The notes under the pieces are model-generated. The model was given only the letters and a program-made list of their open reading frames with translations. It was not told the origin of the DNA and searched no databases. A stretch of 64,000 nucleotides of DNA from Haliotis rufescens (lineage: Eukaryota): NCBI RefSeq assembly GCF_023055435.1, contig NW_025963879.1, forward strand, positions 558,001 to 622,000. Reading direction: 5' to 3'. Positions 1,456 through 59,187 of the stretch are shown piece after piece; positions within the stretch are counted from its first letter, which is position 1; the number at the start of each line of letters is the position of its first letter. The position numbers and the translations under genes are program-made.

Positions 1456-1669
1456 AATATCGAGCCCATCCACAGTTGTTGTTACCGTTACGGCAGCAGT
1501 CTCCCGAGTAGTCGACGTAGCTGTAGCGGGGCCTGAAGTGTCGCAGTGTAGATTGACTTTCAGCCTTTAAAGCACTTTCATAATTCTCTGTCTGATACTT
1601 AATGGAGAGATATTCGCAACTCACCATCACTGCCAGTGATAGGCAGACTAGTATGGGAAGGCAATTCAT
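1456..1669 (-). CDS. Subfamily A paralog A3, exon 1 only (signal peptide, propeptide, start of Cys/Tyr domain); exons 2-7 would lie beyond the left window edge
   Basis: ATG at 1669 and GTAAGT donor after 1456 (214 nt, phase 1). Near-identical to exon 1 of the complete copies at 14696 and 26741. Positions 1-1455 match intron 1 of those copies. Confidence 0.85.
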
Positions 1670-1725
1670 TCTGCTGTGTGTGGAGCTGTCAAGGCTCTGG
1701 CGTTCAAACAGGAGGGAGACGGGGT

Positions 1726-1732
1726 ATTTATA
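1726..1732 (-). promoter_or_regulatory. TATA box of A3
   Basis: TATAAAT on the minus strand, 57 nt upstream of the ATG; same position in all three A copies. Confidence 0.65.
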
Positions 1733-2829
1733 CTGAGATGGATTTCGGTGGAAGATCTGCCATGGGATTTTGTTCTACTTAAACAGTGGTTCAAATACCA
1801 CAGGGTTTGTTTTCGATGTTGAACCAGCTGTTGTCGAAGTACATATCATAGAATATACCAATGTTTGTCATACAGAGATGGACGTTACAGGTGTGTTTCC
1901 ACTCTAGATACGACACCTAGAAAATTTCCTACAGCACAAGTAGGGATGCTTAATCATGCATTTCAAGGTTCGAAACATTTAGGAAACTTGTGGGCAAAAA
2001 TAGTATTTGTTTTATATAATTGAAATTTGAAAGAACTTTTGTTAAATTTGATTATGTGTATTTAACCATCACTTATTCCTGTAACCGTCTTTAAAAAGTA
2101 ATCTGTGGGTGGGTAATTTTGTGTTAAAATAATTTGGTTCAATGAAGACTAATGTGTAAGAAATGAATTTGTACTCACTTGACCTCTACAATGTTTGAAA
2201 TGTAAATTTGTGCCGAAAGAATGCAAATTTATTGAGTTTCAAAGATGTCTAAGATACCCATCAGTAGTTTTGTATTATGGAATGTTTCAAAATGTTTTTT
2301 AACAGTTTTAAATCAAATTATATTTTGAAAAAACCACGTACAATTATTCTTTGAGTGCTGACTAAGCGCCAGTTCATTTCTTTTGGATGAAATATCGCTA
2401 ACTTAACATATTTTCAATTGAAAATTAAACATATTATAAAGTCAAGTGAGAGGTATTATTGCTTTTGCGCCTCAGGTTTATGTACGTTACTATAAATAGT
2501 CGTGAGACATTTGCAATTATTCTCTTTTTGAATATAAAAAAAGACCATAACACCATGTGTCGGTCTTGCAATTAGCTGATTTCAATGATGCGACTTAAAA
2601 CACCTATCTTTTTTCGCACTACAATTATAACCGACGATACCAGCTCTGAACGTATCTGTGTTGAAGATTACGAGCCATAATGCTTTAATTGCTGTGTTTG
2701 TCTATGTTGGGATCCGGGGTAGAATGTGTCGTAAAACCATACTCACTCACTCACTTGGTTTGGATTTTTTCGTTTTCTTTCTTTTCTTGAATTTTGAGAA
2801 ATTTTGAGAAATTTCAAATTTAACATAGC

Positions 2830-5104: not shown

Positions 5105-5145
5105 ACTTCTTTCAGTGCCATTTAGAAGTTCTTTATTACAATTGG

Positions 5146-8138: not shown

Positions 8139-11100
8139 TTATCCGAGCTGGATTTGGTCCCTGCTTGTTGCAAGCACACGAACACTCGCTGCTTCAAGGT
8201 TGTAGAATCCTACAGCAGAACCGGCCGTGCAGTCTCCATTCTCGATCTGCCCAATAACCACCTGTTCTCCAGTCGTTAGGCTGCAAGATATTGGTCCACC
8301 GAAGTCGCCCTGGAAGTAAGGACACAACTAATTATGTATTAACGTTCAATTTTAATCATATTGCATCGCAGAGTTTGTTCGGACCTTTTTATTCAGGTCC
8401 TGGTATTCAGAATTGATTGGAACTTTACCTTTCGTGCCAATGCTTGTTATTGCAATTGAGTTCGTTGAAGCCTACTCTAACGCATTCATGGTCTTCTGGC
8501 ACAGAAGTGAGTGAGCGGGATGTCACCGATGTCACATATGAGGAAAGGTAAACAATAGACACAAATACAAATACACTACGCATTTAAAATAACAAATGAT
8601 CTTCCCAACCGCCCCTCCTCTTCGATGAGAATTAAAGGGTTTTAGGTGTAGAAGGTAGTAACGTTTCGAGATAGAGGCTTCACTATGAAACCATTTCAGC
8701 CTGGAAATAAGGAAACAATATACATACCGCACATGTAGAGCCACTGGGACTGATGAAGCAGTTATATGTGATGGCAGTGTTCGTGAAGTCAAAGACAGCG
8801 GAAGTGTCGGTGGCTGAAAGAAGTGCTTGACACGTGTCGGTTGGCTGCAGACTGGGGATATCCAGGTACTCGAAGGCAGGAGTTGAAGTTCCTGTGATGC
8901 AGAAGAGACGTGCGAGGTTGAGCATATGATATTCCAGGGTAGGTGGGATTGCAGGGTTGGGGAGATGAGATTGTTTAAAACAAATAATCACTTGGGAAAA
9001 TGAAGGGTTGTGGACTTGCAGATAGTTTGGGGCTCTTTCTTCCAGAGGTGAAGCTCTAACTTACGAAATATTTACCCGTGGGGCTAAAACAAGGAATCAG
9101 TATAATGTGCCTTATGAATCCATCTTAAACTGCGGCATTCTATCTCAGAGTGCTAGCACCACAACACTGGCATCAATCCGGACTGGTACAAACAGCCACA
9201 CGCACACGTGCATGCAAGTGAAATAATCTTGAACACGATGTTATACCCCATTTCACTTCACCCCACTGTCTAAAACTCCGAGATGGTATCTTGCATCATT
9301 GACGCCCACTTTTACACATGCGTCACTACGCATCTTCCACTCTTCTGAGATCGCTGCTCACCGGCATTATCAGAGAATCCTGCAGCAGCAACCTTGCAGG
9401 TATCCAGGAGGATGTCGCTTGCCATAGTGCTGGAATAGACACAGGCGATGCCGGGGCAGCTGTTTGACGTCACTGCTGTAGGTAAGGTCACTTCAACAGG
9501 GCCACCTACTCCTCCTGCGGTTGCTGAAATTTCCAAAGGTAAGGATACCTGTACATTGAGTTGATACAATCTGGAAATGCGGAACTACATATTTCTGTCC
9601 ATGGTAAGATAGGTAAGACGTACATTTTTAAACAAAATATTTGTTCCCCTTCTCCTAATTTCTACCTCAACATGTACAAAAGAACGAACCATCATGTATG
9701 TAAATACTCGGGAGATCAACAGCGTACTTGCGATAACTTATGTTCTTTTCATGTGAATAAAATGTGTAAACGAAAACCTAAACACACATCATTGTGAAGT
9801 GACCTGTATCTTACCTGTGATGCCTGTTGCGATAACGGTTCCATCCTGAGCCACAACACTACGAATAGAAAAATATACAGTTGAACTGGCTGCTTTTTCA
9901 GAATGTGTCCGAAACCAGATCAGAGCTGGGTGAAGGAAGGAAACTACCCGTGAGGACAATGTGACATTTTAGTGCTGTCTTTTCGTTGTGAGTGAGTGAG
10001 TTGGTAGTTAGAAGTTGGCTTCAGACATTGTACCCATGTTGGGAATCAAACCCTGTCTTTTAACCAGTAGGCTGTCCCACCATCCAATGGGGCTCGTCGA
10101 ACAAGGGTTCAATTACGACGACGCCTGTGGTGTTTGCATTTCAGTGATACATGTTGCACTTTTGGATTTATACATGTAAAAACACCTGACACATATTTGT
10201 GCTGTGACATACATGATCCTTAACTATAACTATAGGGACGAAATTGTAGAGCTTGAGAGGATCTTTTGGGAAGATCGACAATAACGATAGGTAATCAAGT
10301 ATTTGCAATGCAACATTGTCCATTTTGAAAAGTCCAAAATATTGAATATATATTATTGAACGTTCTATCCCTTTTGACAGCAATATGATCTGCAAGGTTC
10401 AGGAAAATTGTCAAATAAGCGAACCTAGCATGTGAAATGTCGTGCCTGCATCACAAGTGTAAAGTTAGTCGACTCCCCACTGATCTTGGTGCCTTAGGTT
10501 CACTACTTCCTTATCTCTTGGCGCAGATCAGGAGGATGCCACTGTGATTGCCCTTCTGGTTATCTGCGTAATGCTAAATGGTACAATTGAGCGGTATATT
10601 ATTACCAACAATTACACTAATAAAACACTACCTCCTATTAATAATAATATCTTAATAGTAATGAGTATCATATAGCCAGCTTACTCTGCTCCGTTTGCAA
10701 AAGCAGCACAGTTGCTGGGTATAGACAGGGTCGTGCCACTGGTGACGACTCCAGTGCATACAGTTGCTCCACCGATTTGGATGGCCACAAGCCCTGGGAA
10801 CTCATCGCATCCAGCGATAGCAAGGCCGTTCAGTAGCCTCGTGGTGGCGGTTGGGGCGGTTGAGGCCTCAGCTGGACAAACTGAAATTGTACACATAATA
10901 GTCAGTGAGTATGTTCTTGACGCCGCCATCAGCAATATTCCAGCTACACCCTGTCTGTAAATATTCAGGCACAGGAGTGGTTGATCTGATAAGCAGCATA
11001 AACCAGTGACTGAAAGCATGAACATCGATCCATATCATAACGATGGTCCGTAAGCAGCACATTAGGGTTACTGGAAACAATTCTACCCATGAATCTCCAC

Positions 11101-14100
11101 GCTTGTTCTGGTGGTAAATAAATATAGAACAATAAAATGTTTATGAAACTCACATCGTGTTGTGGCTGTTGTTGTTGGAGCTGCAGTAGTAGTTGTGGTA
11201 GTGGTAGTGGTAGTGTTAGTGGGTGCAGCTGTTGTTGTAGTTGGAGCAGCTGTTGTAGTCGTGGGAGCAGCTGTTGTAGTAGTGGTTGTAACAGCAACAG
11301 TTGTTGGAGAACATTGTTGTTCTCCCACACATCCGCAGTATACAACAGAGCTTTGTGGTCTATAATAGTAGCAGCCTCTCCTGGAGTATCGGGATCCATA
11401 GTAGTAGGAAGCATCTGAAACAAACAAGACACGCGATATTCACACACGGGTTTGTCGGCAAAATGTGTGTTTTCTGCGTCGAGGGATACGACGGGACTGA
11501 CAACTGTAAAAACGAATGAGACTGTGTGAGGCAATCTGTTTCTAATCGGGTTATTTTTCACGGAAAGAAAGGTTACAAATAAGCTTCTCAATCAAAGAAT
11601 CACCATCAAAGTCCCGGTTAAGTCATTTCAGAACGTGTATGGTGCATAGCTAAACATTTAAAGCAATTTGCCCCTGGCTTGGCAACATGATGCGCTGTTC
11701 TCTCCCATGCAATGACCTTCACATGGAGTGTTTGAACCACCTAACCCACTGGCTCCATATTGAGAGGGTGCTACCGGTAGATTAGGACACAAAACATGTA
11801 CTTACCATTTTCGCAAACACATGGTATTATTACTGAATTTCCGTGATGCATTCACTAATTTTCCATCACTTATTTGCCTTTTACGCCTTTTTATGATTTG
11901 TTGGTTTGTTGTGTAACGCCGCACTCAGCAATATTCGAGCTATATGACAGCGGTCTATAAATAATCGTGTCTGGACCAGACAATCCAGTGTTTGATATCA
12001 TGAGCATTAATCGACGCATTTCGGATCGATGACATGCATCAACCAAGTCAGCGAGTCTGACCACCCTTTCCCGTTAGTCGCCTCTTACGACAAGCATAGT
12101 CGCATTTTACAGCAAGTATGGGTTGCTGAAGACCTATTCTTCGCCAGATCTTTACGGGTCTTTACGCCCTATGGAATCTGGTTCCGCCGATTATTAAATT
12201 TTCTGGCGTTCACGTTTCTACTATAAAGGCTTCCAAATCTGGAAATATTCAGGACCTCTCGCTGCGTATCACCACCTGAGAAAGTGGCATTTAAGATGGC
12301 GACATCAATAGATCATTCATTCAATAATGCACTTGATTAATATTTATCAGCAAAAAACTTATATATTATGTGTTTGATTATTTCTCTATTTCGGCTAACC
12401 AGGCCTATTCAGTTGTCATTGGCGCATATGCCGTCAATGTATTACGACGTCAAAACCGTCGAGCATGGCAACATGCATGTGTCACAGTTCACAGTACATC
12501 TATTTCGAACAGAAAAAAACTCTTTTATTTACAGTGTCGATATAAGGTCAATTTCGCACATTTGAAGGTGTTATTCCTTTTTTGATTCCTGCTATTTAAT
12601 ATTTGAAATTTCTGGATTACACGGTTGGTTTCCGATCATCGAATACTTAATGCCGAGTACCAAGCAGGGTATCATCATGTATCATATTTTGGTATTACGC
12701 GGTCGGGTATCGAACCACTGACCTTTCGCTCTCTTGAGTGTTCTAGAGTGATACGGGGGCACGGGTGGCCCAGTAACCTAAGGCGCTGCGATTCGCTGTG
12801 CAGAGCTGCGTCCCTTGGGCACGCCAGAAACCTACGATTGTGGGTTTGAATCCCGGTTCGCCCCGATTATGTTTCTAGGTTTGTCAGCACCTACCCGTGT
12901 TCGTAGTCCCTATCATGGGTTTCACAGAAGTGGTAAACGTCTGAGACCTGCATCACGTAGGGCTTTCCTCTCACATTAAGCTGACACGCTGTGATATAAC
13001 TGGAATACTGTTAAAAGCAGCGTTAAACCCAACTCGCTCTAGAGTGATACTAGGATAATTACCAGTCCGTTGTTTTGTTTCACCACAAACTGTTCTTATC
13101 ACTGAGTTAAACTAATTCGTAGTTAAAAGCAATAAACACCTTGCTGAAAGAGTCCATACAATTGCGACTAAACCATGAGCATGTGTTTTATAACCATTAT
13201 CAATTCAATTCAGTTCAATTCAATTCGGGGGCACGGGTGGCCCAGTCGTCTAAGGCGACGTGATTCGCTGTGCAGAGTTGCGTCCCTTAGGCACGCCAGA
13301 AACCTATGATTGTGGGTTCGAATCCCGGTTCGCTCCGATTATGTTTCTAGGTTTGTCAGCACCATACCCGTGCTCGTGGGTTTCACAGAAGTGGTAAACG
13401 TCTGAGACCTGCATCACTTCGGGCTTTCCTCCCACATTAAGCTGACACGCCGCGATATTACTGGAATATTGTTNNNNNNNNNNNNNNNNNNNNNNNNNNN
13501 NNNNNNNNNNNNNNNNNNNNNNNNNNNNNNNNNNNNNNNNNNNNNNNNNNNNNNNNNNNNNNNNNNNNNNNNNNNNNNNNNNNNNNNNNNNNNNNNNNNN
13601 NNNNNNNNNNNNNNNNNNNNTTTCTTTATTAACTCAAACAACCAGCCGGTGATATATGAGCAACAATAATAACAGACATATATACCCCCAATTTTTTTTT
13701 TAGACTAACCAGCCGTGACTCACAGAATCCGGTTGATTAAAAACTACACAAAGATCACACCTGTTTAATAAGCTCTTAATGAACTCCATCCAGTTGTTTC
13801 TATTGTTATTAGTATTATTTATAGAATTTATGTATTTCAATATTAGGGTTGAAAATTTTAGCACAGGTCGATTATTACTTATATGTTTCTGCCAAAACGA
13901 AATCATCCTCTTATATATGATTCTACATATTGGAAATCTCCCAAATTAACCATACATCATATAACCTGGTGTTGAGTTTCTAAGATTGAAGGCAAGTTTA
14001 ATGAATTGTAAATGTACTTTTTCCAATACTGAATGATTTTCGTCTCCTCAAGTTTCACAACCATAGTGAGTGAGTGAGTATGGTTTTACACCGCTTTTAA

Positions 14101-14696
14101 CAATATTCCAGCAATATCACGGCGGGGGACACCAGAAATGGGCTTCACACATTGTACCCATGTCAGGAATCGAACCCGGGTTTTCGGCGTGACGAGCGAA
14201 CGCTTTAACCACTAGGCTACCCGACCGCCCCTTCACAACCATAGGTTAGAATAGGCAAGATTAGAACATCAAAGGCTTTGAGAAGACAATCTACAGGTAA
14301 ATTTAAATTCCGTGCTCTTTTTAATAAAGAGTGATAATACCAAGTGTTCGCGAAAAGAAACTATTGATCTGACATGAGCGTCTGTTTGGGGTGAATAATC
14401 AGTTGGCTTTAGCCGTTACTTTGTTATACAAGATTCATGAATTGTATGTAATAATATATGTATAACCGCACTGATTACTTACAATATCGAGCCCATCCAC
14501 AGTTGTTGTTACCGTTACGGCAGCAGTCTCCCGAGTAGTCGACGTAGCTGTAGCGGGGCCTGAAGTGTCGCAGTGTAGATTGACTTTCAGCCTTTAAAGC
14601 ACTTTCATAATTCTCTGTCTGATACTTCATGGAGAGATATTCGCAACTCACCATCACTGCCAGTGATAGGCAGACTAGTATGGGAAGGCAATTCAT
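8139..14696 (-). CDS. Subfamily A paralog A2: secreted serine-protease homolog (S1 pseudoprotease) with N-terminal Tyr/Cys-rich domain and Thr-rich linker, ~403 aa, 7 exons
   Basis: Exons joined by hand: complement(join(14483..14696,11154..11414,10685..10880,9815..9858,9362..9523,8728..8891,8139..8309)). All introns GT-AG, phases 1,1,2,1,1,0, 1212 nt with no internal stop. Signal peptide MNCLPILVCLSLAVMVSC. S1-like motifs TTR|LLNG, VCTGVV..PSNC, IACVY, STCAGDFGGPISC. Confidence 0.88.
11895..12160 (-). mobile_element. SINE family with central GTCGTAAGAGGCGACTAA motif; other copies ~25508-25778, 32218-32287, 50965-51145, 61392-61570
   Basis: Multiple dispersed copies, an (AACC/AAAC)n tail, and flanking tttacgcc repeats. 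The 3' end resembles the other SINE and LINE tails. Confidence 0.7.
12755..13037 (+). mobile_element. tRNA(Leu-like)-derived SINE with 13-bp TSD
   Basis: TSD tctagagtgatac at 12742-12754 and 13038-13050. The site is empty in paralog A1 (~26207-26219). Confidence 0.85.
13226..13473 (+). mobile_element. Second copy of the tRNA(Leu-like) SINE, inserted in the (ATTCA)n tail of a LINE and running into the N gap
   Basis: Same sequence as 12755-13037; absent from the equivalent position in A3. Confidence 0.8.
13474..13620. other. Assembly gap (147 N) in intron 1 of A2
   Basis: Run of N. Confidence 1.
14067..14231 (-). mobile_element. Short tRNA(Asp-like)-derived SINE with 13-bp TSD; older copies near 9990-10085, 38860-39005, 47830-47960 and 58290-58420
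   Basis: Minus strand reads GGTAGCCTAGTGGTTAAAGCG...GTCACG...GGTTCGATTCC with an (ACTC)n tail. TSD ttcacaaccatag at 14054-14066 and 14232-14244. The site is empty at ~1206 in A3. Confidence 0.85.
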
Positions 14697-17640: not shown

Positions 17641-17656
17641 AGTGATGGATAGTGCT

Positions 17657-21870: not shown

Positions 21871-24800
21871 TTATCCGAGCTGGATTTGGTCCCTGCTTGT
21901 TGCAAGAACACGAACACTCGCTGCTTCAAGGTTGTAGAATCCTACAGCAGAACCGGCCGTGCAGTCACCATTTTCGATCTGCCCAATAACCACCTGTTCT
22001 CCACTCGTTAGGCTGCAAGATATTGGTCCACCGAAGTCGCCCTGGAAGTAACGACAGAACTAATTATGTATTAACGTTGAATTTTTGAGCGTATTGCATC
22101 GCAGAGTTTGTTCGGACCGTTATATTCAGATCCTGGTATTCAGAATTGATTGGAACATTACCTTTCGTGCCAATGCTTGTTATTGCAATTGAGTTCGTAT
22201 AGCCTACTCTAACAAATTCATGGTCTTCTGGCACAGAAGTGTGAGTGAGCGGGATGTCACCGATGTCACATGTGAGGAAACGTCAACAAAAGACACAAAT
22301 ACAAATACACTACGCATTTAAAATAACAAATGATCTACCCAACCGCCCCTCCTCTTCGATGAGAATTAAAGGGTTTTAGGTGTAGAAGGTAGTAACGTTT
22401 CGAGATAGAGGCTTCACTATGAAACCATTCAGCCTGGAAATAAGGGAAACAATATACATACCGCACATGTAGAGCCACTGGGGCTGATGAAGCAGTTATA
22501 TGTGATGGCAGTGTTCGTGAAGTCAAAGACAGCGGAAGTGGGGCTGGCTGAAAGAAGTGCTTGACACGTGTCGGTTGGCTGCAGACTGGGGATATCCAGG
22601 TACTCGAAGGCAGGAGTTGAAGTACCTATGATGCAGAAGAGACGTGCGAGGTTGATCATATGATATTCCAGGTTAGGTGGGATTGTTTAAAACAAATAAT
22701 CACTTGGGAAAATGAAGGGTTGTGACTTCCAGATAGTTTTGGGGCTCTTTCTTCCAGAGGTGAAGCTCTAACTTACGAAATATTTACCCGTGGGGCTAAA
22801 ACAAGGAATCAGTATAATGTGCCTAAGCAATCCATCTTAAACTGCGGCATTCTATCTCAGAGTGCTAGCACCACAACACTGACATAAATCCGGACTAGTA
22901 CAAACAGCCACACGCACACGTGCATGCAAGTGAAATAATCTTGAACACGATGTTATACCCCATTTCACTTCACCCCACTGTCTAAAATTCCGAGATGGTA
23001 TCTTGCATCATTGACTCCCACTTTTACACATGCGTCACTACGCATCTTCCACACTTCTGAGATCGCTGCTCACCGGCATTATCAGAGAATCCTGCAGCAG
23101 CAACCTTGCAGGTATCCAGGAGGATGTCGCTTGCCATAGTGCTGGAATAGACACAGGCGATGCCGGGGCAGCTGTTAGACGTCACTGCTGTAGGTAAGGT
23201 CACTTCAACAGGGCCACCTACTCCTCCTGCGGTTGCTGAAATTTCCAAAGGTAAGGATACCTGTACATTGAGTTGATACAATCTGGAAATGCGGAACTTC
23301 ATATTTCTGTCCATGGTAAGATAGGTAAGACGTACATTTTTAAACAAAATATTTGTTCCCCTTCTCCTAATTTCTACCACAACATGTACAAAAGTACAAA
23401 CCATCATGTATGTAAATACTCGGGAGAGGATAAATTACTTGCGATAAATTATGTTCTTTTCATGTTAATAAAATGTGTTTATACGAAAAACTAAACACAC
23501 ATCATTGTGAAGAGACCTGTCTCTTACCTGTGATGCCTGTTGCGATAACGGTTCCATCCTGAGCCACAACACTACGAATAGAAAAATATACATATGAATT
23601 GGCTGCTTTTTCAGAATGTGCCCGAAACCAGATCAGAGCTGGGTGAACGAAGGAAACTACCCGTGAGGACAATGTGACATTTTAGTGCTGTCTTTTCGTT
23701 GTGAGTGAGTGAGTTGGTGTGTAGCTAGAAGTTGGCTTCAGAGATTGTACCCATGTGGGGAACCAAACCCACCGTCCAATGGGGCTCGTCGAACAAGGGT
23801 ACAATTACGACGACGCCTGTGGTGTTTGCATTTCAATGATACATGTTGTACTATTGGAATTATATACGTAAAACCACCTGACACACATTTGTGCTGTGAC
23901 ATACATGATCCTTAACTATAACTATAGGGACGAAATTGTAGAGCTTGAGAGGATCTTTTGGGAAGATCGACAATAACGATAAGTAAACAAGTAATTTCAA
24001 TGCAACATTGTCCATTTTGATAAATTGTCAAATAAGCGAACCTAGCATGTGAAATGTCGTGCCTGCATCACAAGTGTAAAGTTAGTCGACTCCCAACTGA
24101 TCTTGGTGCCTTAGGTTCACTACTTCCTTATATCTTGGCGCAGATCAGGAAGATGCCACTGTGATTGCCCTTCTGGCAATCTGCGTAATGCTAAATGGTA
24201 CTATTGAGCGGGATATTATTACCAACAATTACACAAATAAAACACTACCTCCTATTAATAATAATATCTTAATAGTAATGAGTATCATATAGCCAGCTTA
24301 CTCTGCTCCGTTTGCAAAAGCAGCACAGTTGCTGGGTATAGACAGGGTCGTGCCACTGGTGACGACTCCAGTGCATACAGTTGCTCCACCGATTTGGATG
24401 GCTACAAGCCCTGGGAACTCATCGCATCCAGCGATAGCAAGGCCGTTCAAAAGCCTCGTGATGGCGGTTGGGGCGGTTGAGGCCTCAGCTGGACAAACTG
24501 AAATTGTACACATAATAGTCAGTGAGTATGTTCTTGACGCCGCCATCAGCAATATTCCAGCTACATCCTGTCTGTAAATATTCGGGCACAGGAGTGGTTG
24601 TTCGATAAGCAACACAAACCAGTGACTGAAAGCATGAACATCGATCCATATCATAACGATGGTCCGTAAGCAGCACATTAGGGTTACTGGAAACAATTCT
24701 ACCAATGAATCTCCACGGTTCTTCTGGTGGTAAATAAATATAGAACAATAAAATGTTTATGAAACTCACATCGTGTTGTGGCTGTTGTTGTTGGAGCTGC

Positions 24801-44202: not shown

Positions 44203-47200
44203 CTAGCCAAGAGTAATCTTGGGTTTACCAAGAATAACTCGGGTTGCTTTTCTGCCGGTGCCAAGGACAATCTTATGTTTGTTAAATCTCCTGAACGGCT
44301 GGTAGCCCAACAGAATAGACCCTTTCCCTCTACGTTCCACTCTGATAGCCGCAGCCTCCAGATTGTAGAAGCCAACGATGTCGGTGCCGTCGCAGGGCAT
44401 GTTCTCAGCCTGACCGATGACGACAATTTCTCCGGTGGTAAGGGGACACATCACAGGGGCTCCAGCATCACCCTGAATAATACATTACGTAAGGTTAGCA
44501 TATAAAAGCGATGAGAAATATTTGAAATAATCACATTAAATCTCTGCTGAAAGTCCATTGTACTAGAATATCCATAGCATGTGTTTATGAATCACTATCA
44601 GATGGTGATGGTTTCAGGGGTTCGTGAAAAGTATGCTGCCCCACCGGTGGCACTCGTTACAAACTAATACAAAGACACGTCAATATTTATCTTAAAACAC
44701 ACGGGAAAGTATGATACAAGTTTATATATGGAATTGCATTGGACAAAATGTTGGTCGCTGGTCAAATTTGGCATGTCTTTTACACAGGTATCAGTAACAC
44801 AAGGCTTTCTGCTGCAATCATGCATTGGATGTTAGTTAATGTGAGGAAGTGCGTTGTGTTATATGTACGTACACCACAGGTAGAAGATCCTGTATTGAAG
44901 AAACAGTTGTACGTAAGACCAGTGTCAAAGAGGACGGCTTGACCAGACGCCTGCAGGAGGGCGGGACAATCGGCGGTGGGCTGGAGACTTGGCACGGTGT
45001 AGGAGGATAATGTTGCGGGGTTCGTGCCTGAAAAGAAACACATACTGAAAATTGAATAAAATGTGAAACATTGCTAACTGGGTTCGAATCCCGGACTTCA
45101 AACATCCTATGAATTCTTTTCTTGATCAGTATGTTATTTTTCTCAATCCCCTTTTGTAAAAATGTGCCAGCCTACTCAATGGTGGAAATCTTAACATTTG
45201 AAAATTCGACTAACGCCCTCGGGTCTAAATGAAATTTCCGGTCATCAAATACCCTATAACACCCGCAAATCAGAAAACACGTCACATTTATTTACTGATT
45301 AGCATATCCATTGCGTGACAGCTGAACTAGCTTAAGTTAACATCGATGGACGGGGTATAAAGTTAACCGAGGAAAACAAATCAGATTGAAAGATCATAGG
45401 CATTAACAGTTTCTTCCTAATTTTGTCAAAATCCTTTCTTAAACCAGTATTATGTACCTGCAAAATCGTCATGTCCAGCACCAACAACGACGCAGCTTGT
45501 GAGGTCAATGTTGTCGACCATGGCAGCGTCATAGATGCATGCAACGCCAGGGCAACTCGTGGAGCTGATAGGTGTGGTCAGAGTGATTTCGAACGGACCT
45601 CCTGTTGCGAGGGTGGTGGCTAGGAAATGGGACAATACATATGAATGCAAAACTAATGTAAATATAGAGTAAGCAAGGTTTAATGCCCAGTTTATCCCTA
45701 TTCTAGCCATATCAGTGCGGGAGGCATTGTACCGATGAGATACACCCTATCTTGGTATTTGATATGACGAGAGAGAGAGAGAGAGAGAGAGCGATTTAAT
45801 CAGTAGGCTGCCCTTCCAATTGATATTGTACTTGGTAGTTATTCTACCAGGGAAGTATATTTTCTTAATCTTATCACGAAATTGATGAATTATATTTTCG
45901 TTTGTCATTACATATTGTTGTCCTTTCTTTGAGAGCTACGCTTCAAAGTACCTGCACTGTCGTCTAAATCGATCCCTTGGTCATAGGTGTTAATTTTTGG
46001 GTCGGTGTTATTTTTCGTAAGTTCATGGATATTCCAGATATTAATGAAGATTTAGTTACTCGAGCAAAGGAAATAGTTCACTTACTGTCAATAACAGGTA
46101 GAGTTTCAATGACGGTGCCAGTGGTTGGGTCTTGTAGTTCAAGCCTAAAATTAAATCGATATGCATACCAATGTTAAAGAATATTTATCGCGGGGTCACT
46201 TTCTTCTTTGATTTGTTTATTCAAACCTCATTATTTTACCAACAATGAAATAATAATGGTAACTAAAAACGGTAACGCTGTATCTGTGAAAATATGTAGT
46301 GAAAAAGTACGAATGTATTAGAGAGAAAAATATTAAGTCATTATGAAAATATCAGAATGTACTTCAGAGAAAGCCTATTATTACTTCCGGGTAGAAGGAA
46401 TGAGAGTAATAACTTTCCGATATTGCACATTATGTAGCGTCATGAGATCACACATTGATAATATTACGTCATCTTAACAATAGTTTGACTTGAAGTCACA
46501 ATGAGTAATATACAGAATAACTCAAATCTCGGATTTACGATTTAGCTACGAGCTGTGATTGAATATAAGTTTCCTCGTACTTGACGTGAGCCTTACACCA
46601 TGCCTTCATTCGCTACGAACAATCAGACTCAACATTGGAATCGTTGGTTATTCTCTGAATACATACGCAGTGCCCATGAGCTGAGCGCAGTTGTTGGGTA
46701 CGGAGACAGTTGTTGTTGAGGTGACGACACCCGTGCACACAGTACTTCCCGAAGCGGGGTCCACGACCCTGACGACGCCGGGGTTGGTGGTGCAGTCTGT
46801 CACAGCGGTACCGCCGAGAATCCTGGTAACGGTAGACTGTGTGGTCGCCGTCGTTGGGCAGACTAGAATAGAGTTCAGAAATGTATTGACCAATATGTAA
46901 GTCACTTGCGCATACGACTTCATTCGCACCGAAAACAAAATACCAGTTTACTTTGAGCGCTAGATACTGAACTTATAAAGGTTATTACTGTCTCCTTTAA
47001 AAAATTGTCACCCGTTTCCGGTTAAGGAGGTGTCGGTTTAGAGAGGTTTGCCAAAGGAGCAAAAGACATGTCTGCTTCGACAGACAACAGCTGTGCGGGT
47101 TTTTTTTATTATAGCTATCTTCTATACCATTTTTGGTTGACATAACACCCGTTTAGGGTGAATATTGGTTTATAGAGAGGTCATTTTAGCGAGCATTGCA

Positions 47201-48744
47201 AAGGGCAATAAGGTAATCATCGTGTGATGCATACTTTGGGCACAATGCAATTACAAGGGCTACGTCGGATTATAAATTTGGTGTAAAGATGACGGTCAAG
47301 ATAGTATCGTTTTATTGTGAATGGATGATTTTAATAAGAATTGCTGAAGGTCCTATTTTAACAATGTGCGTTCGACAATGCCATGTTATTAACCATACTT
47401 TTTTAAATTTTATGATACAGCAATCGCAGTTAAATCCACTTACATCGTGTTACTACAGTAGTAGTCGGAGTGGTGGTTGTAGTTGTAGTCACTGTAGTGG
47501 TAGCAGTGGTCGTTGTCGCAGTTGTAGTTGTCGCAGTTGTAGTTGTAGCAGCCGTAGTAGTAGCAGTTGTTGTCGTAGCAGCTGTGGTAGTTGTTGCGGT
47601 AGTAGTGGTAGTCGTTGTGGTTGTTGTAGTTGCTGGTGCAGCTGTTGTTGCTGCTGCAGTTGCTGGTACGTTGGAACACGAGGATTGGTAGGAGCTACAG
47701 AGGCACTGGATCTTGCATGAAGAATACCAGAAGTTACCAGGATAGAAAGGCATCGTGTTGAAATAGAAGTAGTTGTTTCCTGCAGAGTAAAAGAATAATG
47801 TTTTCAATGGCGACGTTGGGTTCTTGTGAGTGAATATGATTTTATGCCAATAGTCCAACAATATCACGACTCGATACACCACAAATGGACTAGCCCATGT
47901 GAGAAATCGGACCCGGGTCTTCGGCCTGCCATCCGTACGCTTTAACAACTGGGCTTCCCATCGTCTCTTTCTGGTCGTTTCATAAGGGGATTGTAGTGTT
48001 ACAAAACAGACAGGCTACATACATGTATATACGGACAGCCGGTGCTCTACGTACATAGGGTTCGCTATAACAACGACCGGTAAACGTTTGTACCAAAGTC
48101 CTGTGTATCAATAAATCACTGTTTTCATCTTGCAATTTATTAGTTTTATTTAAATATGCAACAGTTGTTTCCCCCAAACATTCAAAGATAAAAGTATTGG
48201 TTTTTAACTGAGTGCTATATTCGGATGGTCTTGTCAAATTTCCTTTCATGCTCTTTATTAAATGTCAAATGGTTGCTTAACCGAACATTTCCAATTGGTT
48301 CAAATGAAAAGCACTTAAAACCTGTAAAAACATAACTATTTAAATTCAGTACTGAAATGTCGAGAACTATTTGTTTCATAATATTTGTATGTAGACAAAA
48401 ACCCACTGGTTCTGCTGTATCTGTTGTTGTTATGGCAGTCGGCGCAAAATAGCAAACGTATGTAAATTCAATAGTAACATGTCGAAAACATTTATCCAAT
48501 ATTACTTAAATGAAGTGTACATGTAATTCTTACTTGTTCTGCTGTATCTTTTGTAGTAACGGCAGTCGGCGATGTTGTTAGCACAGCATTGTCCCGAAGT
48601 ATCCAGCCAACACGATCTGATGTCTCTGGTCATTTTGCTCACGTCAGTGGCTCTCAAGAATGTTTGTCTCTTGAAAAATGCATTTCTGTTGGCCGCGTAT
48701 GTGACGACTGCAAACGTCGCCAGGAGAAGGACCAGCTTCAACAT
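44203..48744 (-). CDS. Subfamily B paralog B2: secreted S1 pseudoprotease, ~462 aa, 7 exons
   Basis: complement(join(48534..48744,47444..47779,46667..46862,46086..46144,45458..45619,44873..45027,44203..44472)). 1389 nt in frame, GT-AG introns. Motifs R|ILGG and STCGGDAGAPVMC. Confidence 0.88.
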
Positions 48745-54732: not shown

Positions 54733-56305
54733 CTAGCCAAGAGTAATCTTGGGTTTACCAAGAATAACTCGGGTTGCTTTTCTGCCGGTGCCAAGGACAA
54801 TTTTATGTTTGTTAATTCTCCTGAACGGCTGGTAGCCCAACAGAATAGACCCTTTCCCTCTACGTTCCACTCTGACAGCCGCAGCCTCCAGATTGTAGAA
54901 GCCAACGATGTCGGTGCCGTCGCAGGGCATGTTCTCAGCCTGACCGATGACGACAATTTCTCCGGTGGTAAGGGGACACATCACAGGCGCTCCAGCATCA
55001 CCCTGAATAATACATTACGTAAGGTTAGTATATAAAAGCGATGAGAAACATTTGAAATAATCACACGAAGTTTTTGCTGAAAGTCCATTGTACTATTATA
55101 TCCATAGCATGTGTTTATGAATCACTATCAGGTGGTGATGGTACCAGGTGTTCGTGAAAAGGTGAAAGTATGCCGCCCCACCGGTGGCACTCGTTACAAA
55201 CTAATACAAAGACACGTCAATATTTATCTTAAAACACACGGGAAAGTATAATACAAGTGAATATGAGGAATTGCATTGGACAAAATGTTGGTCGCTGGTC
55301 AAATTTGGCATGTCTTTTACACAGGTATCAGTAACACAAGGCTTTCTGCTGCAATCATGCATTGGATGTAAGGTAATGTGAGGAAGTGCGTTGTGTTATA
55401 TATACGTACACCACAGGTAGAAGATCCTGTATTGAAGAAACAGTTGTACGTAAGGCCAGTGTCAAAGAGGACGGCTTGACCAGACGCCTGCAGGAGGGCG
55501 GGACAATCGGCAGTGGGCTGGAGACTTGGCACGGTGTAGGAGGATAATGTTGCGGGGTTCGTGCCTGAAAAGAAACACATACTGAAAATTGAATTAATGT
55601 GAAACATTGCTAACTGGGTTCGAATCCCGGACTTTTAACATCCTATGAATTCTTTTCTTGATCAGTATGGTGATTTTATCAATCCACATTTGTAAAAATG
55701 TGCCAGTCTACTCAATGGTGGAAATCTTAACATTTGAAAATTCGACTAACGCCCTCGGGTCTAAATGAAATTTCCGGTCATCAAATACCCTAAAACACCC
55801 GCAAATCAGAAAACACGTCACATTTATTTACTGATTTATCATATCCATTGCGTGACAGCTGAACTAGGTGAAGTTAACATCGATGGACGGGGTATAAAGT
55901 TAACCGAGGAAAACAAATCAGATTGAAAGATCATAGGCATTAACAGTTTCTTCCTAATTTTGTCAAAATCCTTTCTTAAACCAGTATTATGTACCTGCAA
56001 AATCGTCATGTCCAGCACCAACAACGACGCAGCTTGTGAGGTCAATGTTGTCGACCATGGCAGCGTCATAGATGCATGCAACGCCAGGGCAACTCGTGGA
56101 GCTGATAGGTGTGGTCAGAGTGATTTCGAACGGACCTCCTGTTGCGAGGGTAGTGGCTAGGAAATGGGACAATACATATGAATGCAAAACTAATGTAAAT
56201 ACAGAGTAAGCAAGGTTTAATGCCCAGTTTATCCCTATTCTAGCCATATCAGTGCGGGAGGCATTGTACCGATGAGTTACACCCTATCTTGGTATTTGAT
56301 GTGAC

Positions 56306-56336
<31 letters not shown>

Positions 56337-59187
56337 TGAGATTTAATCAGTAGGCTGCCCTTCCAATTGATATTGTACTTGGTAGTTATTCTACCAGGGA
56401 AGAATATTTTCTTAATCGTATCACGAAATTGATGAATTATATTTTCATTTGTCATTACATATTGTTGTCCTTTCTTTGAGAGCTACGCACCAAAGTACCT
56501 GCACTGTCGTCTAAATCGATCCCTTGGTCATAGGTGTTAATTTTTGGGTCGGTGTTATTTTTCGTAAGTTCATGGATATTCCAGATATTAATGAAGATTT
56601 AGTTACTCGAGCAAAGGAAATCGTTCACTTACTGTCAATAACAGGTAGAGTTTCAATGACGGTGCCAGTGGTTGGGTCTTGTAGTTCAAGCCTAAAATTA
56701 AATCGATATGTATACCAATGTTAAAGAACATTTATCGCGGGGTCACTTTCTTCTTTGATTTGTTTATTCAGACCTCATTATTTTACCAATAATAACTATT
56801 ATTTTACAATAGTAACTAAAAACGGCAACGCTGTATCTGTGAAAATGTCATATGTAGTGAAAAAGTACGAATGTATTAGAGAGAAAAATATTAAGTCATT
56901 ATGAAAATATCAGAATGTACTTCAGAGAAAGCCTATTATTACTTCCGGGTAGAAAGAATGAGAGTAACAACTTTCCGATATTTGCACATTATGCAGCGTC
57001 ATGAGATCACAAATTGATAACATTACGTCATCTAAACAATAGTTTGACTTGAAGTCACAATGAGTTATATACAGAATAACTCAAATCTCGGATTTACGGT
57101 TTAGCTACCAGCTGTGATTGAATACAAGTTTCCTCGTACTTGACGTGGGCCTTACACTATTCCTTCATTCGCTACGGACAATTAGATTCAGATATTGAAA
57201 AAATTGGTTATTCTCTGAATATTATACATACGCAGTGCTCATAAGCTGAGCGCAGTTGTTGGGTACGGAGACAGTTGTTGTTGAGGTGACGACACCCGTG
57301 CACACAGTACTTCCCGAAGTGGGGTCCACGACCCTGACGACGCCGGGGTTGGTGGTGCAGTCTGTCACAGCGGTACCGCCGAGAATCCTGGTAACGGTAG
57401 ACTGTGTGGTCGCCGTCGTTGGGCAGACTAGTATAGAGTTCAGAAATGTATTGACCAATATGTAAGTCACTTGCGCATACGACTTCATTCGCACCGAAAA
57501 CAAAATACCAGTTTACTTTGAGCGCTAGATACTGAACTTATAAAGGTTATTACTGTCTCCTTTAGAAAATGTCACCCGTTTCCGGTTATGGAGGTGTCGG
57601 TATAACAGCTGCTTAGAGTGAATTTTGGTTTATAGAGAGGTCGGTTTAGCGAGCATTGCAATGGGTAATAAGGTAATCATCGTGTGATGCATACTTTGGG
57701 CACAATGCAATTGCAAGGGCTACGTCGGATGATAAATTTGGTGTAAAGATGACGGTCAAGAAAGTATCGTTTTATTGTGAATTGATGATTTTAATAAGAA
57801 TTGCTGAAGGTCCCATTTTAACAATGTGCGTTCGACAATGCCATGTTATTAACCATACTTTTTAACTTTTATGATACAGCAAGCACATTTACTCCACTTA
57901 CATCGTGTTACTACAGTAGTAGTAGGAGTGGTGGTTGTAGTTGTAGTCACTGTAGTGGTAGCAGTGGTCGTTGTCGCAGTTGTAGTTGTCGCAGTTGTAG
58001 TTGTAGCAGCCGTAGTAGTAGCAGTTGTTGTCGTAGCAGCTGTGGTAGTTGTTGCGGTAGTAGTGGTAGTCGTTGTGGTTGTTGTAGTTGCTGGTGCAGC
58101 TGTTGTTGCTGCTGCAGTTGCTGGTACGTTGGAACACGAGGATTGGTAGGAGCTACAGAGGCACTGGATCTTGCATGAAGAATACCAGAAGTTACCAGGA
58201 TAGAAAGGCATCGTGTTGAAATAGAAGTAGTTGTTTCCTGCAGAGTAAAAGAATGATGTTTTCAATGGCGATGTTGGGCTCTTGTGAGTAAATATGATTT
58301 TATGCCAATAGTCCAACATTATCACGACTCGGGACACCAGAAATGGACTTGCCAATGTGAGAAATCGGACCCGGGTCTTCGGCCTGACAAGCGAACGCTT
58401 TAACAACTGGGCTTCCCATCGTCTCTTTCTGGTCGTTTCATAAGGGGATTGTAGTGTTACAAAACAGACAGGCTACATACATGTATATGCGGACAGCCGG
58501 TGCTCTACGTACATAGGGTTCGCTATAACAACGACCGGTAAACGTTTGTACCAAAGTCCTGTGTATCAATAAATCACTGTTTTCATCTTGCAATTTATAA
58601 GTTTTATTTAAATATGCAACAGTTGTTTCCCCCAAACATTCAAAGATAAAAGTATTGGTTTTTAACTGAGTGCTATATTCGGATAGTCTTTCCTTTCATG
58701 CTCTTTATTGAATGTCAAATGGTTGCTTAACTGAACATTGGTTCAAATGAAAAGCACTCAAAACTTGTAAAAACGTAACTATTTAAATTCAGTACTGATA
58801 TGTCGAGAACTATTTGTTTCATAATATTTGTATGAAGACAAAAACCCACTGGTTCTGCTGTATCTGTTGTAGTTATGGCAGTCGGCGCAAAATAGCAAAC
58901 GTATGTAAATTCAATAGTAACATGTCGAAAACATTTATCCCATATTACTTAAATGAAGTGTACATGTAATTCTTACTTGTTCTGCTGTATCTTTTGTAGT
59001 AACGGCAGTCGGCGATGTTGTTAGCACAGCATTGTCCCGAAGTATCCAGCCAACACGATCTGATGTCTCTGGTCATTTTGCTCACGTCAGTGGCTCTCAA
59101 GAATGTTTGTCTCTTGAAAAATGCATTTCTGTTGGCCGCGTATGTGACGGCTGCAAACGCCGCCAGAAACAGCACTAGCTTCAACAT
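54733..59187 (-). CDS. Subfamily B paralog B1: secreted S1 pseudoprotease, ~462 aa, 7 exons
   Basis: complement(join(58977..59187,57902..58237,57232..57427,56633..56691,55995..56156,55410..55564,54733..55002)). 1389 nt in frame, GT-AG introns. Near-identical to B2, with GDAGAP. Confidence 0.88.

What the first reader, a model, noticed from the sequence alone, without database searches (positions are those of the whole stretch)
1456..59187. Tandem family of secreted mosaic pseudoproteases: novel Tyr/Cys head, mucin stalk, dead trypsin domain, IxLG tail
Seen: six minus-strand 7-exon paralogs in two diverged subfamilies. They share intron phases (1,1,2,1,1,0), the lengths of exon 3 (196 nt) and exon 5 (162 nt), and the same domain order. 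Established: a Cys-knot head, Thr linker and non-catalytic S1 domain is the layout of arthropod clip-domain SPHs (masquerade, PPAF-II), which act as cofactors or as adhesion/recognition proteins. Here the head does not show clip-domain Cys spacing, and I do not recognise it. Inference: a lineage-specific, recently amplified family of extracellular binding or structural proteins (mucus, shell/periostracum, adhesive, egg coat or immune recognition) that may have converged on the clip-SPH design. The ORF track misses it because it is split across introns.
Basis: partly seen in the sequence, partly recalled or inferred. Interest (0 to 1): 0.88.

Follow-up and report, generated by a model that had tools for sequence, protein, structure and literature searches.

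The report
Abalone mucin-stalked dead-protease gene cluster
A tandem cluster of transcribed red-abalone genes encodes secreted proteins with an unrecognised Tyr/Cys-rich head, a threonine (mucin-like) stalk and a trypsin-derived domain that has lost its catalytic histidine; it is a gastropod-restricted variant of the known "serine protease homologue" theme, its function is untested, and public annotation misnames it.

Summary
The window (Haliotis rufescens, contig C101:558001-622000) carries five complete minus-strand 7-exon genes, A2, A3, B1, B2 and B3, plus exon 1 of a sixth, A1. A1's other exons lie just left of the window. All models have GT-AG introns, phases 1,1,2,1,1,0, exon 3 of 196 nt and exon 5 of 162 nt.

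All six B2 introns are confirmed by intron-less contigs in RNA-like runs and are absent from a DNA run. A2 and A3 are identical to RefSeq proteins named "cell wall protein DAN4-like". The whole genome holds eight intact copies of four subtypes in one ~91-kb cluster.

The trypsin call is invisible exon by exon. It is supported by:
- a marginal Pfam hit on orthologues;
- profile-profile alignment (P 1e-4);
- language-model neighbours (0.97, all Trypsin);
- a model with an S1 fold (Z 15, biased alignment);
- four of five introns lying at the positions and phases of a genuine trypsin gene of the same genome.

His57 is Asn in all eight copies, so these are pseudoproteases.

The head has no detectable relatives. 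Relatives were found only in Haliotis and Patella. Paralogue dN/dS is mostly 0.2-0.3. The assembly gap lies in intron 1 of A2.

Function is unknown. This is a new variant of a known kind. The scan's other notes on this family lie on this same window.

The parts
1456..1669 (-). A1 exon 1 (ATG, signal peptide, start of head); exons 2-7 lie left of the window
   Evidence: 214 nt, donor GTAAGT; with outside exons gives an intact 409-aa protein
14483..14696 (-). A2 exon 1 (signal peptide + head part 1)
   Evidence: spliced product identical to XP_046333475.2
13474..13620 (.). assembly gap (N) inside intron 1 of A2
   Evidence: non-coding position; flanks colinear with the A1 unit; abuts a SINE-like repeat at 13227-13473
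11154..11414 (-). A2 exon 2 (Tyr/Cys head part 2 + Thr stalk)
10685..10880 (-). A2 exon 3, 196 nt: FCP Cys, TR|LLNG junction (Arg codon 10837-10839), Cys42..Asn-Cys58 (Asn at the His57 place, 10711-10713)
9815..9858 (-). A2 exon 4, 44-nt micro-exon
9362..9523 (-). A2 exon 5, 162 nt (CPGIAC, Cys136)
8728..8891 (-). A2 exon 6 (Cys168, Cys182, Cys191)
8139..8309 (-). A2 exon 7: GDFGGP (Phe at the Ser195 place, 8301-8303), Cys201, Cys220, ends ..QIQLG-stop
26528..26741 (-). A3 exon 1
   Evidence: product identical to XP_046333485.2
24770..25033 (-). A3 exon 2 (head part 2 + stalk)
24302..24497 (-). A3 exon 3, 196 nt
23528..23571 (-). A3 exon 4, 44 nt
23074..23235 (-). A3 exon 5, 162 nt
22462..22625 (-). 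A3 exon 6
21871..22041 (-). A3 exon 7 (GDFGGP .. QIQLG-stop)
39310..39520 (-). B1 exon 1
38424..38819 (-). B1 exon 2 (head part 2 + 96-aa stalk)
37791..37986 (-). B1 exon 3, 196 nt (TVTR|ILGG; Asn at the His57 place, 37814-37816)
36502..36560 (-). B1 exon 4, 59 nt
35589..35750 (-). B1 exon 5, 162 nt
35039..35193 (-). B1 exon 6
34113..34382 (-). B1 exon 7: GDSGAP (Ser195 kept, 34374-34376) + 33-aa basic (I/V)xLG tail
48534..48744 (-). B2 exon 1
   Evidence: junction 47779/48534 in transcript contigs
47444..47779 (-). B2 exon 2 (head part 2 + 76-aa stalk)
46667..46862 (-). B2 exon 3, 196 nt
   Evidence: junctions 46862/47444 and 46144/46667
46086..46144 (-). B2 exon 4, 59 nt
   Evidence: junction 45619/46086
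45458..45619 (-). B2 exon 5, 162 nt
   Evidence: junction 45027/45458
44873..45027 (-). B2 exon 6
   Evidence: junction 44472/44873
44203..44472 (-). B2 exon 7: GDAGAP (Ala at the Ser195 place, 44464-44466) + basic tail; transcript contig runs on to 44155
58977..59187 (-). B3 exon 1
57902..58237 (-). B3 exon 2
57232..57427 (-). B3 exon 3, 196 nt
56633..56691 (-). B3 exon 4, 59 nt
55995..56156 (-). B3 exon 5, 162 nt
55410..55564 (-). B3 exon 6
54733..55002 (-). B3 exon 7 (GDAGAP + basic tail)

Best explanation
SHOWN. The region is part of an eight-gene tandem cluster in Haliotis rufescens, in the order D, A1, A2, A3, B1, B2, B3, C. Each gene encodes a secreted protein of 400-510 aa with these parts in order:
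- a signal peptide;
- a basic head of about 88 aa that is about 19% aromatic and holds 7-8 Cys, with no detectable relatives;
- a stalk of 52 to about 140 aa that is 58-69% Thr in the six window genes;
- a conserved Cys (FCP), followed 12-13 residues later by Arg|(I/L)(L/I/M)(G/N)G;
- an acidic 12-Cys domain of about 230 aa that descends from a trypsin-type (S1) protease gene.

In all eight copies the residue before Cys58 is Asn instead of His57. The segment between residues 60 and 100, which carries Asp102 in trypsins, is about 35 residues shorter. Ser195 is Phe (A), Ala (B2, B3), Thr (D), or Ser only in B1 and C. These proteins therefore cannot work as conventional serine proteases. B2 is transcribed and spliced as modelled. 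Most paralogue comparisons give dN/dS of 0.2-0.3.

INFERRED (mechanism, about 35-40%).
- The stalk is heavily O-glycosylated and holds the head away from the S1-like domain.
- A trypsin- or furin-like convertase cuts after the conserved Arg (Patella has RRRR|MIGG).
- The new N-terminus docks on the conserved Asp194 (GDxG is kept in all eight copies), which orders the former active-site region.
- The head and stalk stay tethered through the FCP cysteine, like Cys1-Cys122 of chymotrypsin.
- The matured domain then acts as a binding or cofactor module, and the basic, aromatic head as a second binding or cross-linking module in an extracellular matrix or secretion.

This is how clip-domain SPHs, HGF/MSP and haptoglobin use dead S1 domains.
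For: Gene models and splicing. All six B2 junctions appear in RNA-like contigs and none in the DNA run. A2 and A3 are identical to RefSeq proteins.

Cluster of eight intact genes.

S1 ancestry:
- Pfam PF00089 scores 21.2 bits (cut-off 20.6) on the H. rubra orthologue. It scores 13.1 bits, colinear over profile positions 2-188 of 220, on the Patella protein.
- hhalign of the family against three trypsins of the same genome gives P 9.8e-5 over 122 columns.
- The family HMM ranks the true trypsin ORFs first among 365 ORFs.
- ESM-Atlas features for residues 159-403 of the A2 protein give a top score of 0.97, and all 30 listed hits fall in Trypsin-family sets.
- MAFFT aligns Cys42, 58, 136, 168, 191, 201 and 220 and places Cys182 within one column.
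- The AF2 model has pLDDT 74 and pTM 0.77. It matches only chymotrypsin-fold chains, with Z 15.3, rmsd 3.4 A and 198 residues aligned; the top matches include the non-catalytic haptoglobin and protein Z.
- Four of the five introns of the S1 part lie at the position and phase of introns in a bona fide trypsin gene, L005.

Triad status.
Constraint: dN/dS is 0.18-0.32 in most pairs.
Secretion and composition.
Against: - The window's own proteins give no Pfam Trypsin hit, whether whole or exon by exon.
- Exon profiles find no protease in the PDB.
- AF2 with family sequences alone failed (pLDDT 38). The good model used an alignment that included three real trypsins, so it is not independent evidence.
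- Foldseek TM is only about 0.5.
- Cleavage at the Arg, glycosylation, disulfide tethering, ligand, tissue and localisation were not tested.
- Transcription of the A-type genes was not tested here.
- The RNA nature of the runs is the tool's guess.
- dN/dS rests on few substitutions, and the A1-A2 pair gives 0.5-0.9.
Confidence: 0.6

Rival explanations
1. A purely structural secretion or matrix component, such as mucus, periostracum, an adhesive or an egg coat. The O-glycosylated stalk and the Tyr-rich head (cross-linked through Tyr/DOPA or disulfides) would do the work. The dead S1 domain would be only a stable globular end-cap, with no cleavage switch and no specific ligand.
For: - The head is 18% Tyr in A-type and about 19% aromatic in B-type, basic and Cys-rich.
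- The stalk is 58-69% Thr and varies in length between copies (52-96 aa in the window, about 140 aa in copy C), as in mucin VNTRs.
- The main transcript contig is deep, 295 in one run.
- Tandem amplification fits a dosage-driven secreted product.
Against: - The Arg|(I/L)(L/I/M)(G/N)G junction, Asp194 and all 12 Cys of the domain are conserved across four subtypes that are only 40-63% identical, and in Patella. That is more constraint than a passive cap needs.
- None of the 14 reported limpet pedal-mucus adhesive proteins shows this architecture (PMC7333891).
Confidence: 0.27
2. The C-terminal domain is not an S1 relative. It is a new Cys-rich fold whose trypsin-like motifs are chance or convergent.
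For: - The window's own proteins and single exons give no Pfam or PDB sequence hit.
- AF2 failed on the family-only alignment.
- The successful model was seeded with trypsins.
Against: These lines do not depend on that model:
- Pfam hits on two orthologues.
- hhalign P 1e-4.
- Language-model neighbours that are all Trypsin, top score 0.97.
- Colinear canonical cysteines.
- Four shared intron positions and phases with a real trypsin gene of the same genome.
Confidence: 0.06
3. Some copies (B1 and C, which keep Ser195 and Asp194) are active hydrolases that use an unconventional general base.
For: B1 reads GDSGAP and C reads GDSGGG.
Against: - His57 is Asn in every copy.
- The Asp102 segment is shortened.
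- The 214-216 substrate-binding strand is altered.
- B2 and B3, 95-96% identical to B1 in the domain, carry Ala at the Ser195 place with no sign of relaxed constraint.
Confidence: 0.04
4. Decaying duplicates or an annotation artefact with no function.
For: The copies are recent tandem duplicates surrounded by transposon debris.
Against: - Eight of eight open frames are intact and every splice site is canonical.
- A spliced full-length transcript exists.
- dN/dS is below 1.
- Orthologues exist in four other Haliotis species and two Patella species.
Confidence: 0.03

Closest known systems
Arthropod clip-domain serine protease homologues (masquerade, PPAF-II; PDB 2b9l)
   Same: - Both are secreted proteins with a disulfide-rich N-terminal module, a low-complexity Ser/Thr linker and a C-terminal S1 domain lacking catalytic residues.
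- Both have an Arg-type junction before an IVGG-like motif.
- The honey-bee masquerade orthologue is tabulated as 5[clip - S/T-rich low complexity] - SPH, and SPHs are defined by loss of one or more triad residues (PMC1761132).
- PPAF-II is among the Foldseek matches.
   Different: - The head is not a clip domain. Pfam gives no CLIP hit. The Cys order is CC first and then four spaced Cys, against the six-Cys, three-disulfide clip pattern.
- Clip-SPHs usually keep His57 and Asp102 and change Ser195 to Gly. Here His57 is lost in all copies and the Asp102 segment is shortened.
- The family is found in gastropods, not arthropods.
Vertebrate non-catalytic S1 proteins: haptoglobin, protein Z, HGF/MSP beta-chains, azurocidin
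   Same: - They use a dead chymotrypsin fold as a binding module.
- Haptoglobin and protein Z are among the best structural matches (Z 14.3-15.3).
- HGF-beta and MSP-beta are also matched.
- From general knowledge: HGF needs cleavage at the zymogen site to act, and stays disulfide-linked.
   Different: - The N-terminal modules are unrelated (CCP, Gla-EGF, kringle).
- They have no mucin stalk.
- Sequence identity is only 9-13% in the structural alignments.
Conventional abalone trypsin genes (for example L005, G000:C1:26699906-26703163; others lie 94-356 kb right of the window's right end on the same contig)
   Same: - Four intron positions and phases are shared.
- The canonical Cys pairs align.
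- hhalign gives P 1e-4.
   Different: - The trypsins keep TAAHC, NDIAL and GDSGGP. They score 40-65 bits per exon against PF00089, where the family's exons score nothing.
- They have no head or stalk.
- The family has one extra intron and a deletion of about 35 residues.
RefSeq names 'cell wall protein DAN4-like' and 'mucin-22-like'
   Same: Only the Thr-rich low-complexity stretch resembles them.
   Different: No homologous domain is shared. The names come from compositional similarity, and no Pfam domain was on record for these proteins.

Membership tests
S1 (chymotrypsin-fold) peptidase superfamily, Pfam PF00089 | Significant match to the Trypsin profile | tested here: inconclusive
   - H. 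rubra orthologue: 21.2 bits against a cut-off of 20.6, E 2.8e-4.
- Patella: 13.1 bits, E 0.088, colinear over positions 2-188 of 220.
- The window's own A2/A3 proteins, the B-type orthologue and all single exons: no hit.
- hhalign against same-genome trypsins: P 9.8e-5.
S1 (chymotrypsin-fold) peptidase superfamily, Pfam PF00089 | Two-beta-barrel chymotrypsin fold | tested here: met
   The AF2 model has pLDDT 74.2. All 500 best Foldseek matches are S1 chains. VIA gives Z 15.3, rmsd 3.4 A and 198 residues aligned. Caveat: the alignment held three true trypsins, and the family-only run failed. Independent support comes from ESM features, 0.97 to Trypsin clusters.
S1 (chymotrypsin-fold) peptidase superfamily, Pfam PF00089 | Canonical disulfide cysteines 42-58, 136-201, 168-182, 191-220 | tested here: met
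   All eight cysteines are conserved in the eight paralogues. Seven sit in the same columns as in same-genome trypsins and Cys182 within one column. The pairing itself was not observed.
S1 (chymotrypsin-fold) peptidase superfamily, Pfam PF00089 | Shared gene structure with S1 protease genes | tested here: met
   Introns at these places match trypsin gene L005:
- before the pre-activation Cys (phase 1);
- after the His57 exon (phase 2, shifted by 5 codons);
- 12 residues after Cys136 (phase 1);
- before GDxGGP (phase 0).
Active serine protease (S1 catalytic member) | Catalytic triad His57, Asp102, Ser195 | tested here: not met
   - His57 is Asn in all eight H. rufescens copies and in H. asinina, and Ser in Patella.
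- The Asp102 segment is shortened, with no aligned Asp.
- Ser195 is Phe, Ala, Thr or Gly, and Ser only in B1 and C.
Serine protease homologue (SPH; PMC1761132: S1-like sequence lacking one or more catalytic residues) | S1-like domain with at least one triad residue replaced | tested here: met
   See the rows above; the definition was read.
Clip-domain SPH | N-terminal clip domain: six conserved Cys forming three disulfides (PF12032) | tested here: not met
   Pfam gives no CLIP hit at E up to 10 on full-length P0001, P0006, P0009 or P0007. The head has 7-8 Cys in the order CC..C..C..C.C..C.
Clip-domain SPH | Proteolytic cleavage at the junction, with the chains staying disulfide-linked | not testable with these tools
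   Only the sequence motif is seen: a Cys 12-13 residues before R|(I/L)(L/I/M)(G/N)G, conserved in all copies, and RRRR|MIGG in Patella.
Mucin-type (PTS) domain protein | Long Thr/Ser/Pro-rich segment in a secreted protein | tested here: met
   The stalks are 52-96 aa with 58-69% Thr, following a signal peptide. O-glycosylation was not tested.
Yeast DAN4 / cell-wall mannoprotein (the RefSeq name) | Homology outside the low-complexity region | tested here: not met
   No fungal or DAN-type family appears in the Pfam scans. Every relative returned is a gastropod protein.

The most novel reading that the evidence does not exclude
This is a gastropod-specific class of cleavage-activated, non-catalytic S1 ligands or cofactors, working like HGF or a clip-SPH. 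It arose independently from a molluscan trypsin gene by fusion to a new Tyr/Cys-rich head and a mucin stalk. It has diversified into four subtypes with different 'active-site' residues, and hence perhaps different partners. The universally conserved C-terminal Leu-Gly, multiplied in the basic B-type tail, would serve as a processing or amidation signal.
Probability: 0.25. Interest if true: 0.65.

Novelty: new variant of a known kind. Interest (0 to 1): 0.5.

Why it matters
Dead proteases reused as binding modules are a recurring theme: haptoglobin, HGF and the insect SPHs that control melanisation. I found no description of a molluscan example with this architecture.

The results do three things:
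- They show that proteins filed in RefSeq as "DAN4-like", "mucin-22-like" or "uncharacterized" contain a cryptic S1 domain.
- They define an eight-gene cluster in a farmed and conservation-relevant animal.
- They give a clean case in which shared intron positions rescue a homology call that profile methods barely see.

If the cleavage switch is real, the family offers an independent origin of the SPH design for comparative study. If the head proves to be a cross-linking or adhesive module, it is of interest for biomaterials. At present the function is unknown, so the value is mainly in annotation and in generating hypotheses.

Tried and rejected
- Pfam on ten single exons, E up to 10: no hit.
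- PDB sequence search with the exon-7 profile: nothing. With the exon-3 profile: only chance hits to antibody light chains, E about 0.05.
- Pfam on the window's own full-length proteins (P0006 = A2, P0009 = A3) and on the B-type orthologue P0001: no Trypsin hit.
- AF2 on a seven-row family-only alignment: pLDDT 38, unusable.
- Exhaustive profile search with exon 7: apart from three Haliotis proteins, only two bacterial repeat proteins (P0004, P0005). I rejected these as summed repeat matches.
- Head (residues 19-112 of A2): no relatives by word-indexed search, no usable language-model neighbour, no Pfam family.
- Literature: no paper holds the accession numbers or LOC names. 'Haliotis + DAN4-like' gives only unrelated papers. 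Abalone SPH/mucin and shell-proteome searches found nothing relevant. The limpet pedal-mucus adhesive paper lists no protein of this architecture.
- Earlier notes of the scan, searched by words: no other window with this family.
- An ORF reading 'MDNVALQIL' in intron 3 looked at first like the NDIAL/Asp102 motif. I rejected it, because the real exon 4 is a 44- or 59-nt micro-exon elsewhere, and the B2 one is confirmed by transcript junctions.

Full report
WHAT IS THERE. A self-comparison shows two kinds of tandem unit: about 12.4-13 kb (three A units) and about 10.5 kb (three B units). Translated comparison of A against B picked out six conserved minus-strand blocks. Reading the flanks gave seven exons per gene, including a 44-nt (A) or 59-nt (B) micro-exon 4. 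Mapping the A3 and B2 models onto the other copies gave intact frames for A2 (403 aa), A3 (404), B1 (482), B2 and B3 (462). Every intron is GT-AG, the phases are 1,1,2,1,1,0, exon 3 is 196 nt and exon 5 is 162 nt. A1 has only exon 1 in the window. Its other exons lie 1.0-4.2 kb to the left and complete an intact 409-aa protein.

THE GAP. The N run 13474-13620 lies in intron 1 of A2, so frame is not at issue. The outer flanks, 12443-13226 and 13621-14066, match one contiguous stretch of the A1 unit (1-773, 776-1218). The 247 nt left of the gap are a dispersed SINE-like repeat with at least five other copies. The join is therefore consistent with continuity, and RefSeq's model spans it.

EXPRESSION. 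Seven runs of one organism label, from two studies, hold 20-24% of the sampled words of the B2 gene, which is about its exon share. I laid contigs of two of these runs, one from each study, and of one run of a second organism label. They join exactly at 44472/44873, 45027/45458, 45619/46086 and 46144/46667. The two first-label runs also join at 46862/47444 and 47779/48534. All joints have CT..AC ends on the plus strand. One 1520-nt contig (depth 295) covers E1-E7 from 48794 to 44155. A DNA run that covers all 30 bins has none of these joints. The runs' RNA nature is the tool's guess, but intron-less contigs absent from DNA are what transcripts look like. Five older runs of the same label hold none of the words, so expression is probably tissue- or stage-specific. 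Run identities are coded, so I cannot name a tissue. I did not test A-type transcription.

WHOSE GENES. An exhaustive profile search with exon 7 found only three family proteins among 1.84 billion representatives. Word-indexed searches added a few more. The relatives are:
- H. cracherodii XP_071086317.1 (B-type, 98.5% identical to B2) and a 'mucin-22-like' A-type;
- H. rubra LOC124260320;
- an H. asinina protein;
- H. rufescens XP_046333475.2 and XP_046333485.2, both named 'cell wall protein DAN4-like';
- Patella vulgata LOC126816046 and a P. caerulea protein.
My A2 and A3 models are identical to the two H. rufescens proteins, which identifies the genome as red abalone. No H. rufescens B-type protein was returned.

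Genome-wide, exon 7 occurs eight times, all on contig C101 between 542 and 628 kb. The two extra genes, D on the left and C on the right, are also intact 7-exon genes. Domain identities between subtypes are 40-63%.

A NOTE ON METHOD. Searches used single exons by reference, or database proteins (P0006 and P0009, identical to A2 and A3; P0001, 98.5% identical to B2). Joining was done only inside scripts, for translation, paralogue alignment, dN/dS and local comparison with loci of this genome. Searching the window's own spliced B proteins was therefore left out.

IS THE C-TERMINAL DOMAIN A TRYPSIN RELATIVE? Exon by exon, no: Pfam gave nothing, and exon profiles found no protease in the PDB. PF00089 over the whole genome hits hundreds of ordinary trypsin exons, some 94-356 kb to the right of the window's right end on the same contig, but none inside the window. 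The window's own full-length proteins also give no Trypsin hit.

Five other lines agree that it is.
(1) Pfam scores 21.2 bits (cut-off 20.6) on the H. rubra A-type orthologue. It scores 13.1 bits on Patella, colinear from the MIGG start to profile position 188.
(2) A family HMM ranks the real trypsin ORFs first among 365 ORFs. hhalign against three same-genome trypsins gives P 9.8e-5 over 122 columns.
(3) ESM-Atlas features of residues 159-403 of the A2 protein have Trypsin clusters as all 30 neighbours, best 0.97. Shuffled proteins reach 0.95 about once in 100.
(4) MAFFT puts Cys42, 58, 136, 168, 191, 201 and 220 in the trypsin columns and Cys182 within one column. It also aligns GDxGGP and the GxY end motif. 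AF2 on that 19-row alignment gives pLDDT 74 and pTM 0.77. The model matches only chymotrypsin-fold chains: Foldseek E 1e-7 with TM about 0.5, and VIA Z 15.3, rmsd 3.4 A, 198 residues, with the top matches including the non-catalytic haptoglobin and protein Z. This line is not independent, because three rows were trypsins and the family-only run failed.
(5) Gene structure. In a bona fide trypsin gene of this genome (L005), four introns match family introns:
- phase 1, one split codon before the Cys that precedes the activation site;
- phase 2, just after TAAHC;
- phase 1, in a Gly codon 12 residues after Cys136;
- phase 0, between Cys191-x and GDSGGP.
The family has introns at these same four places and phases (the second shifted by 5 codons), plus one extra intron, E4|E5. 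I regard descent from an S1 protease gene as established, at about 0.93.

IS IT DEAD? The residue before Cys58 is Asn in all eight H. rufescens copies and in H. asinina, and Ser in Patella. The 60-100 segment is about 35 residues shorter and has no aligned Asp102. Ser195 is Phe (A), Ala (B2, B3, H. cracherodii), Thr (D) or Gly (Patella), and Ser only in B1 and C. The 214-216 strand is altered. By the usual definition (PMC1761132) these are serine protease homologues. Three things are kept everywhere: all 12 Cys, Asp194 (GDxG), and the junction Arg|(I/L)(L/I/M)(G/N)G with a Cys 12-13 residues upstream. Patella has a furin-type RRRR|MIGG.

THE OTHER PARTS.
- Head: about 88 aa, pI 8.7-9.4, 7-8 Cys. 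A-type has 16 Tyr; B-type has 8 Tyr plus 9 Phe/Trp.
- Stalk: 52-96 aa in the window and about 140 aa in copy C, 58-69% Thr in the window genes, with length differing between near-identical copies.
- S1-like domain: acidic, pI 4.1-4.9.
- Tail: B-type adds a 33-aa tail of pI 12 with three more (I/V)xLG units. All eight genes end in Leu-Gly-stop.
The head matches no Pfam family (CLIP included), no protein in the word-indexed search and no Atlas neighbour. It is shared by A, B, C and D, and in reduced form by Patella.

SELECTION. Within subfamilies dS is 0.01-0.14 and dN/dS mostly 0.18-0.32. Counts are small, and A1-A2 gives 0.5-0.9. Between A and B, synonymous sites are saturated. A and B both exist in H. 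cracherodii, so the subtypes are old. The triplications are recent, or have been homogenised by gene conversion.

HOW IT PROBABLY WORKS. Shown: a secreted, stalked, non-catalytic S1 protein family that is transcribed and constrained. Inferred, by analogy with clip-SPHs, HGF/MSP and haptoglobin:
- cleavage at the conserved Arg;
- docking of the new N-terminus on Asp194;
- disulfide tethering of head and stalk;
- use of the matured domain and the basic, aromatic head as two binding or cross-linking modules in an extracellular secretion or matrix.
The main rival is a passive structural mucus or matrix protein. Ligand, tissue and processing are all untested.

NOVELTY. The kind of protein (a dead S1 domain behind a Cys-rich module and an S/T linker) is known from arthropods and vertebrates. 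This head, the universal loss of His57 together with a shortened first barrel, the gastropod restriction and the eight-gene cluster make it a new variant. The gene models themselves are already in RefSeq under misleading names. I found no paper mentioning them.

Noticed in passing
window 34113-34214, 44203-44304, 54733-54834 (B tails); stop codons of all genes: All eight cluster genes end in Leu-Gly-stop although the preceding residues differ (QIQLG, RVQLG, DVVLG, ITLG). B-type adds a 33-aa tail of pI 12 with three more (I/V)xLG units separated by basic residues. Copies C and D and the A-type end at the first LG, so the B extension looks derived. A terminal Gly could be an amidation signal; this is untested.
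   Followed up: partly
window 42781-43342 and about 53457-53985: A minisatellite of 54-nt (2 x 27 nt) units, about 10.5 copies at 79% match. One copy lies in each of the B1-B2 and B2-B3 spacers. It reads as a spurious plus-strand ORF with 'VALNPTS' repeats.
   Followed up: partly
window 17656-19096 (insertion), ORFs 18599-18811(-) and 30607-31083(+): Transposon debris lies between the genes. One ORF is RNase H-like (PF00075, 27.4 bits), inside a 1.4-kb insertion with strong GC skew (0.43) that the A1-A2 spacer lacks. Another is a zinc-knuckle, gag-like ORF (PF15288, 23.2 bits).
   Followed up: partly
window 307-568, 12751-13012, 13227-13473, 30251-30474, 35926-36172: A dispersed SINE-like repeat of about 250 nt, 87-95% alike between copies. 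One copy abuts the assembly gap and probably caused it.
   Followed up: partly
G000:C101:716469-977664 (94-356 kb right of the window's right end): More than a dozen conventional trypsin exons (PF00089, 37-51 bits each) lie on the same contig. A neighbouring protease cluster may be the source of the family's S1 domain; this was not tested.
   Followed up: no
window 34113-59187 (B1-B3): No H. rufescens B-type protein is in the protein collections, although B2 is transcribed and H. cracherodii has an annotated orthologue. The three B genes may be missing from the RefSeq protein set of this genome.
   Followed up: partly
window 39521-39559: B1 has an in-frame ATG 13 codons upstream of the conserved MLKLV start. 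B2 and B3 lack it. Which start B1 uses is unknown.
   Followed up: no
L011 (G000:C101:538001-548000) and L013-L014 (622001-642000): Two further intact family genes flank the window: D (434 aa, GDTGAP) on the left and C (509 aa, GDSGGG, stalk of about 140 aa) on the right. The donor of exon 5 in C is ambiguous (71204 or 71207 in window-relative numbering).
   Followed up: yes
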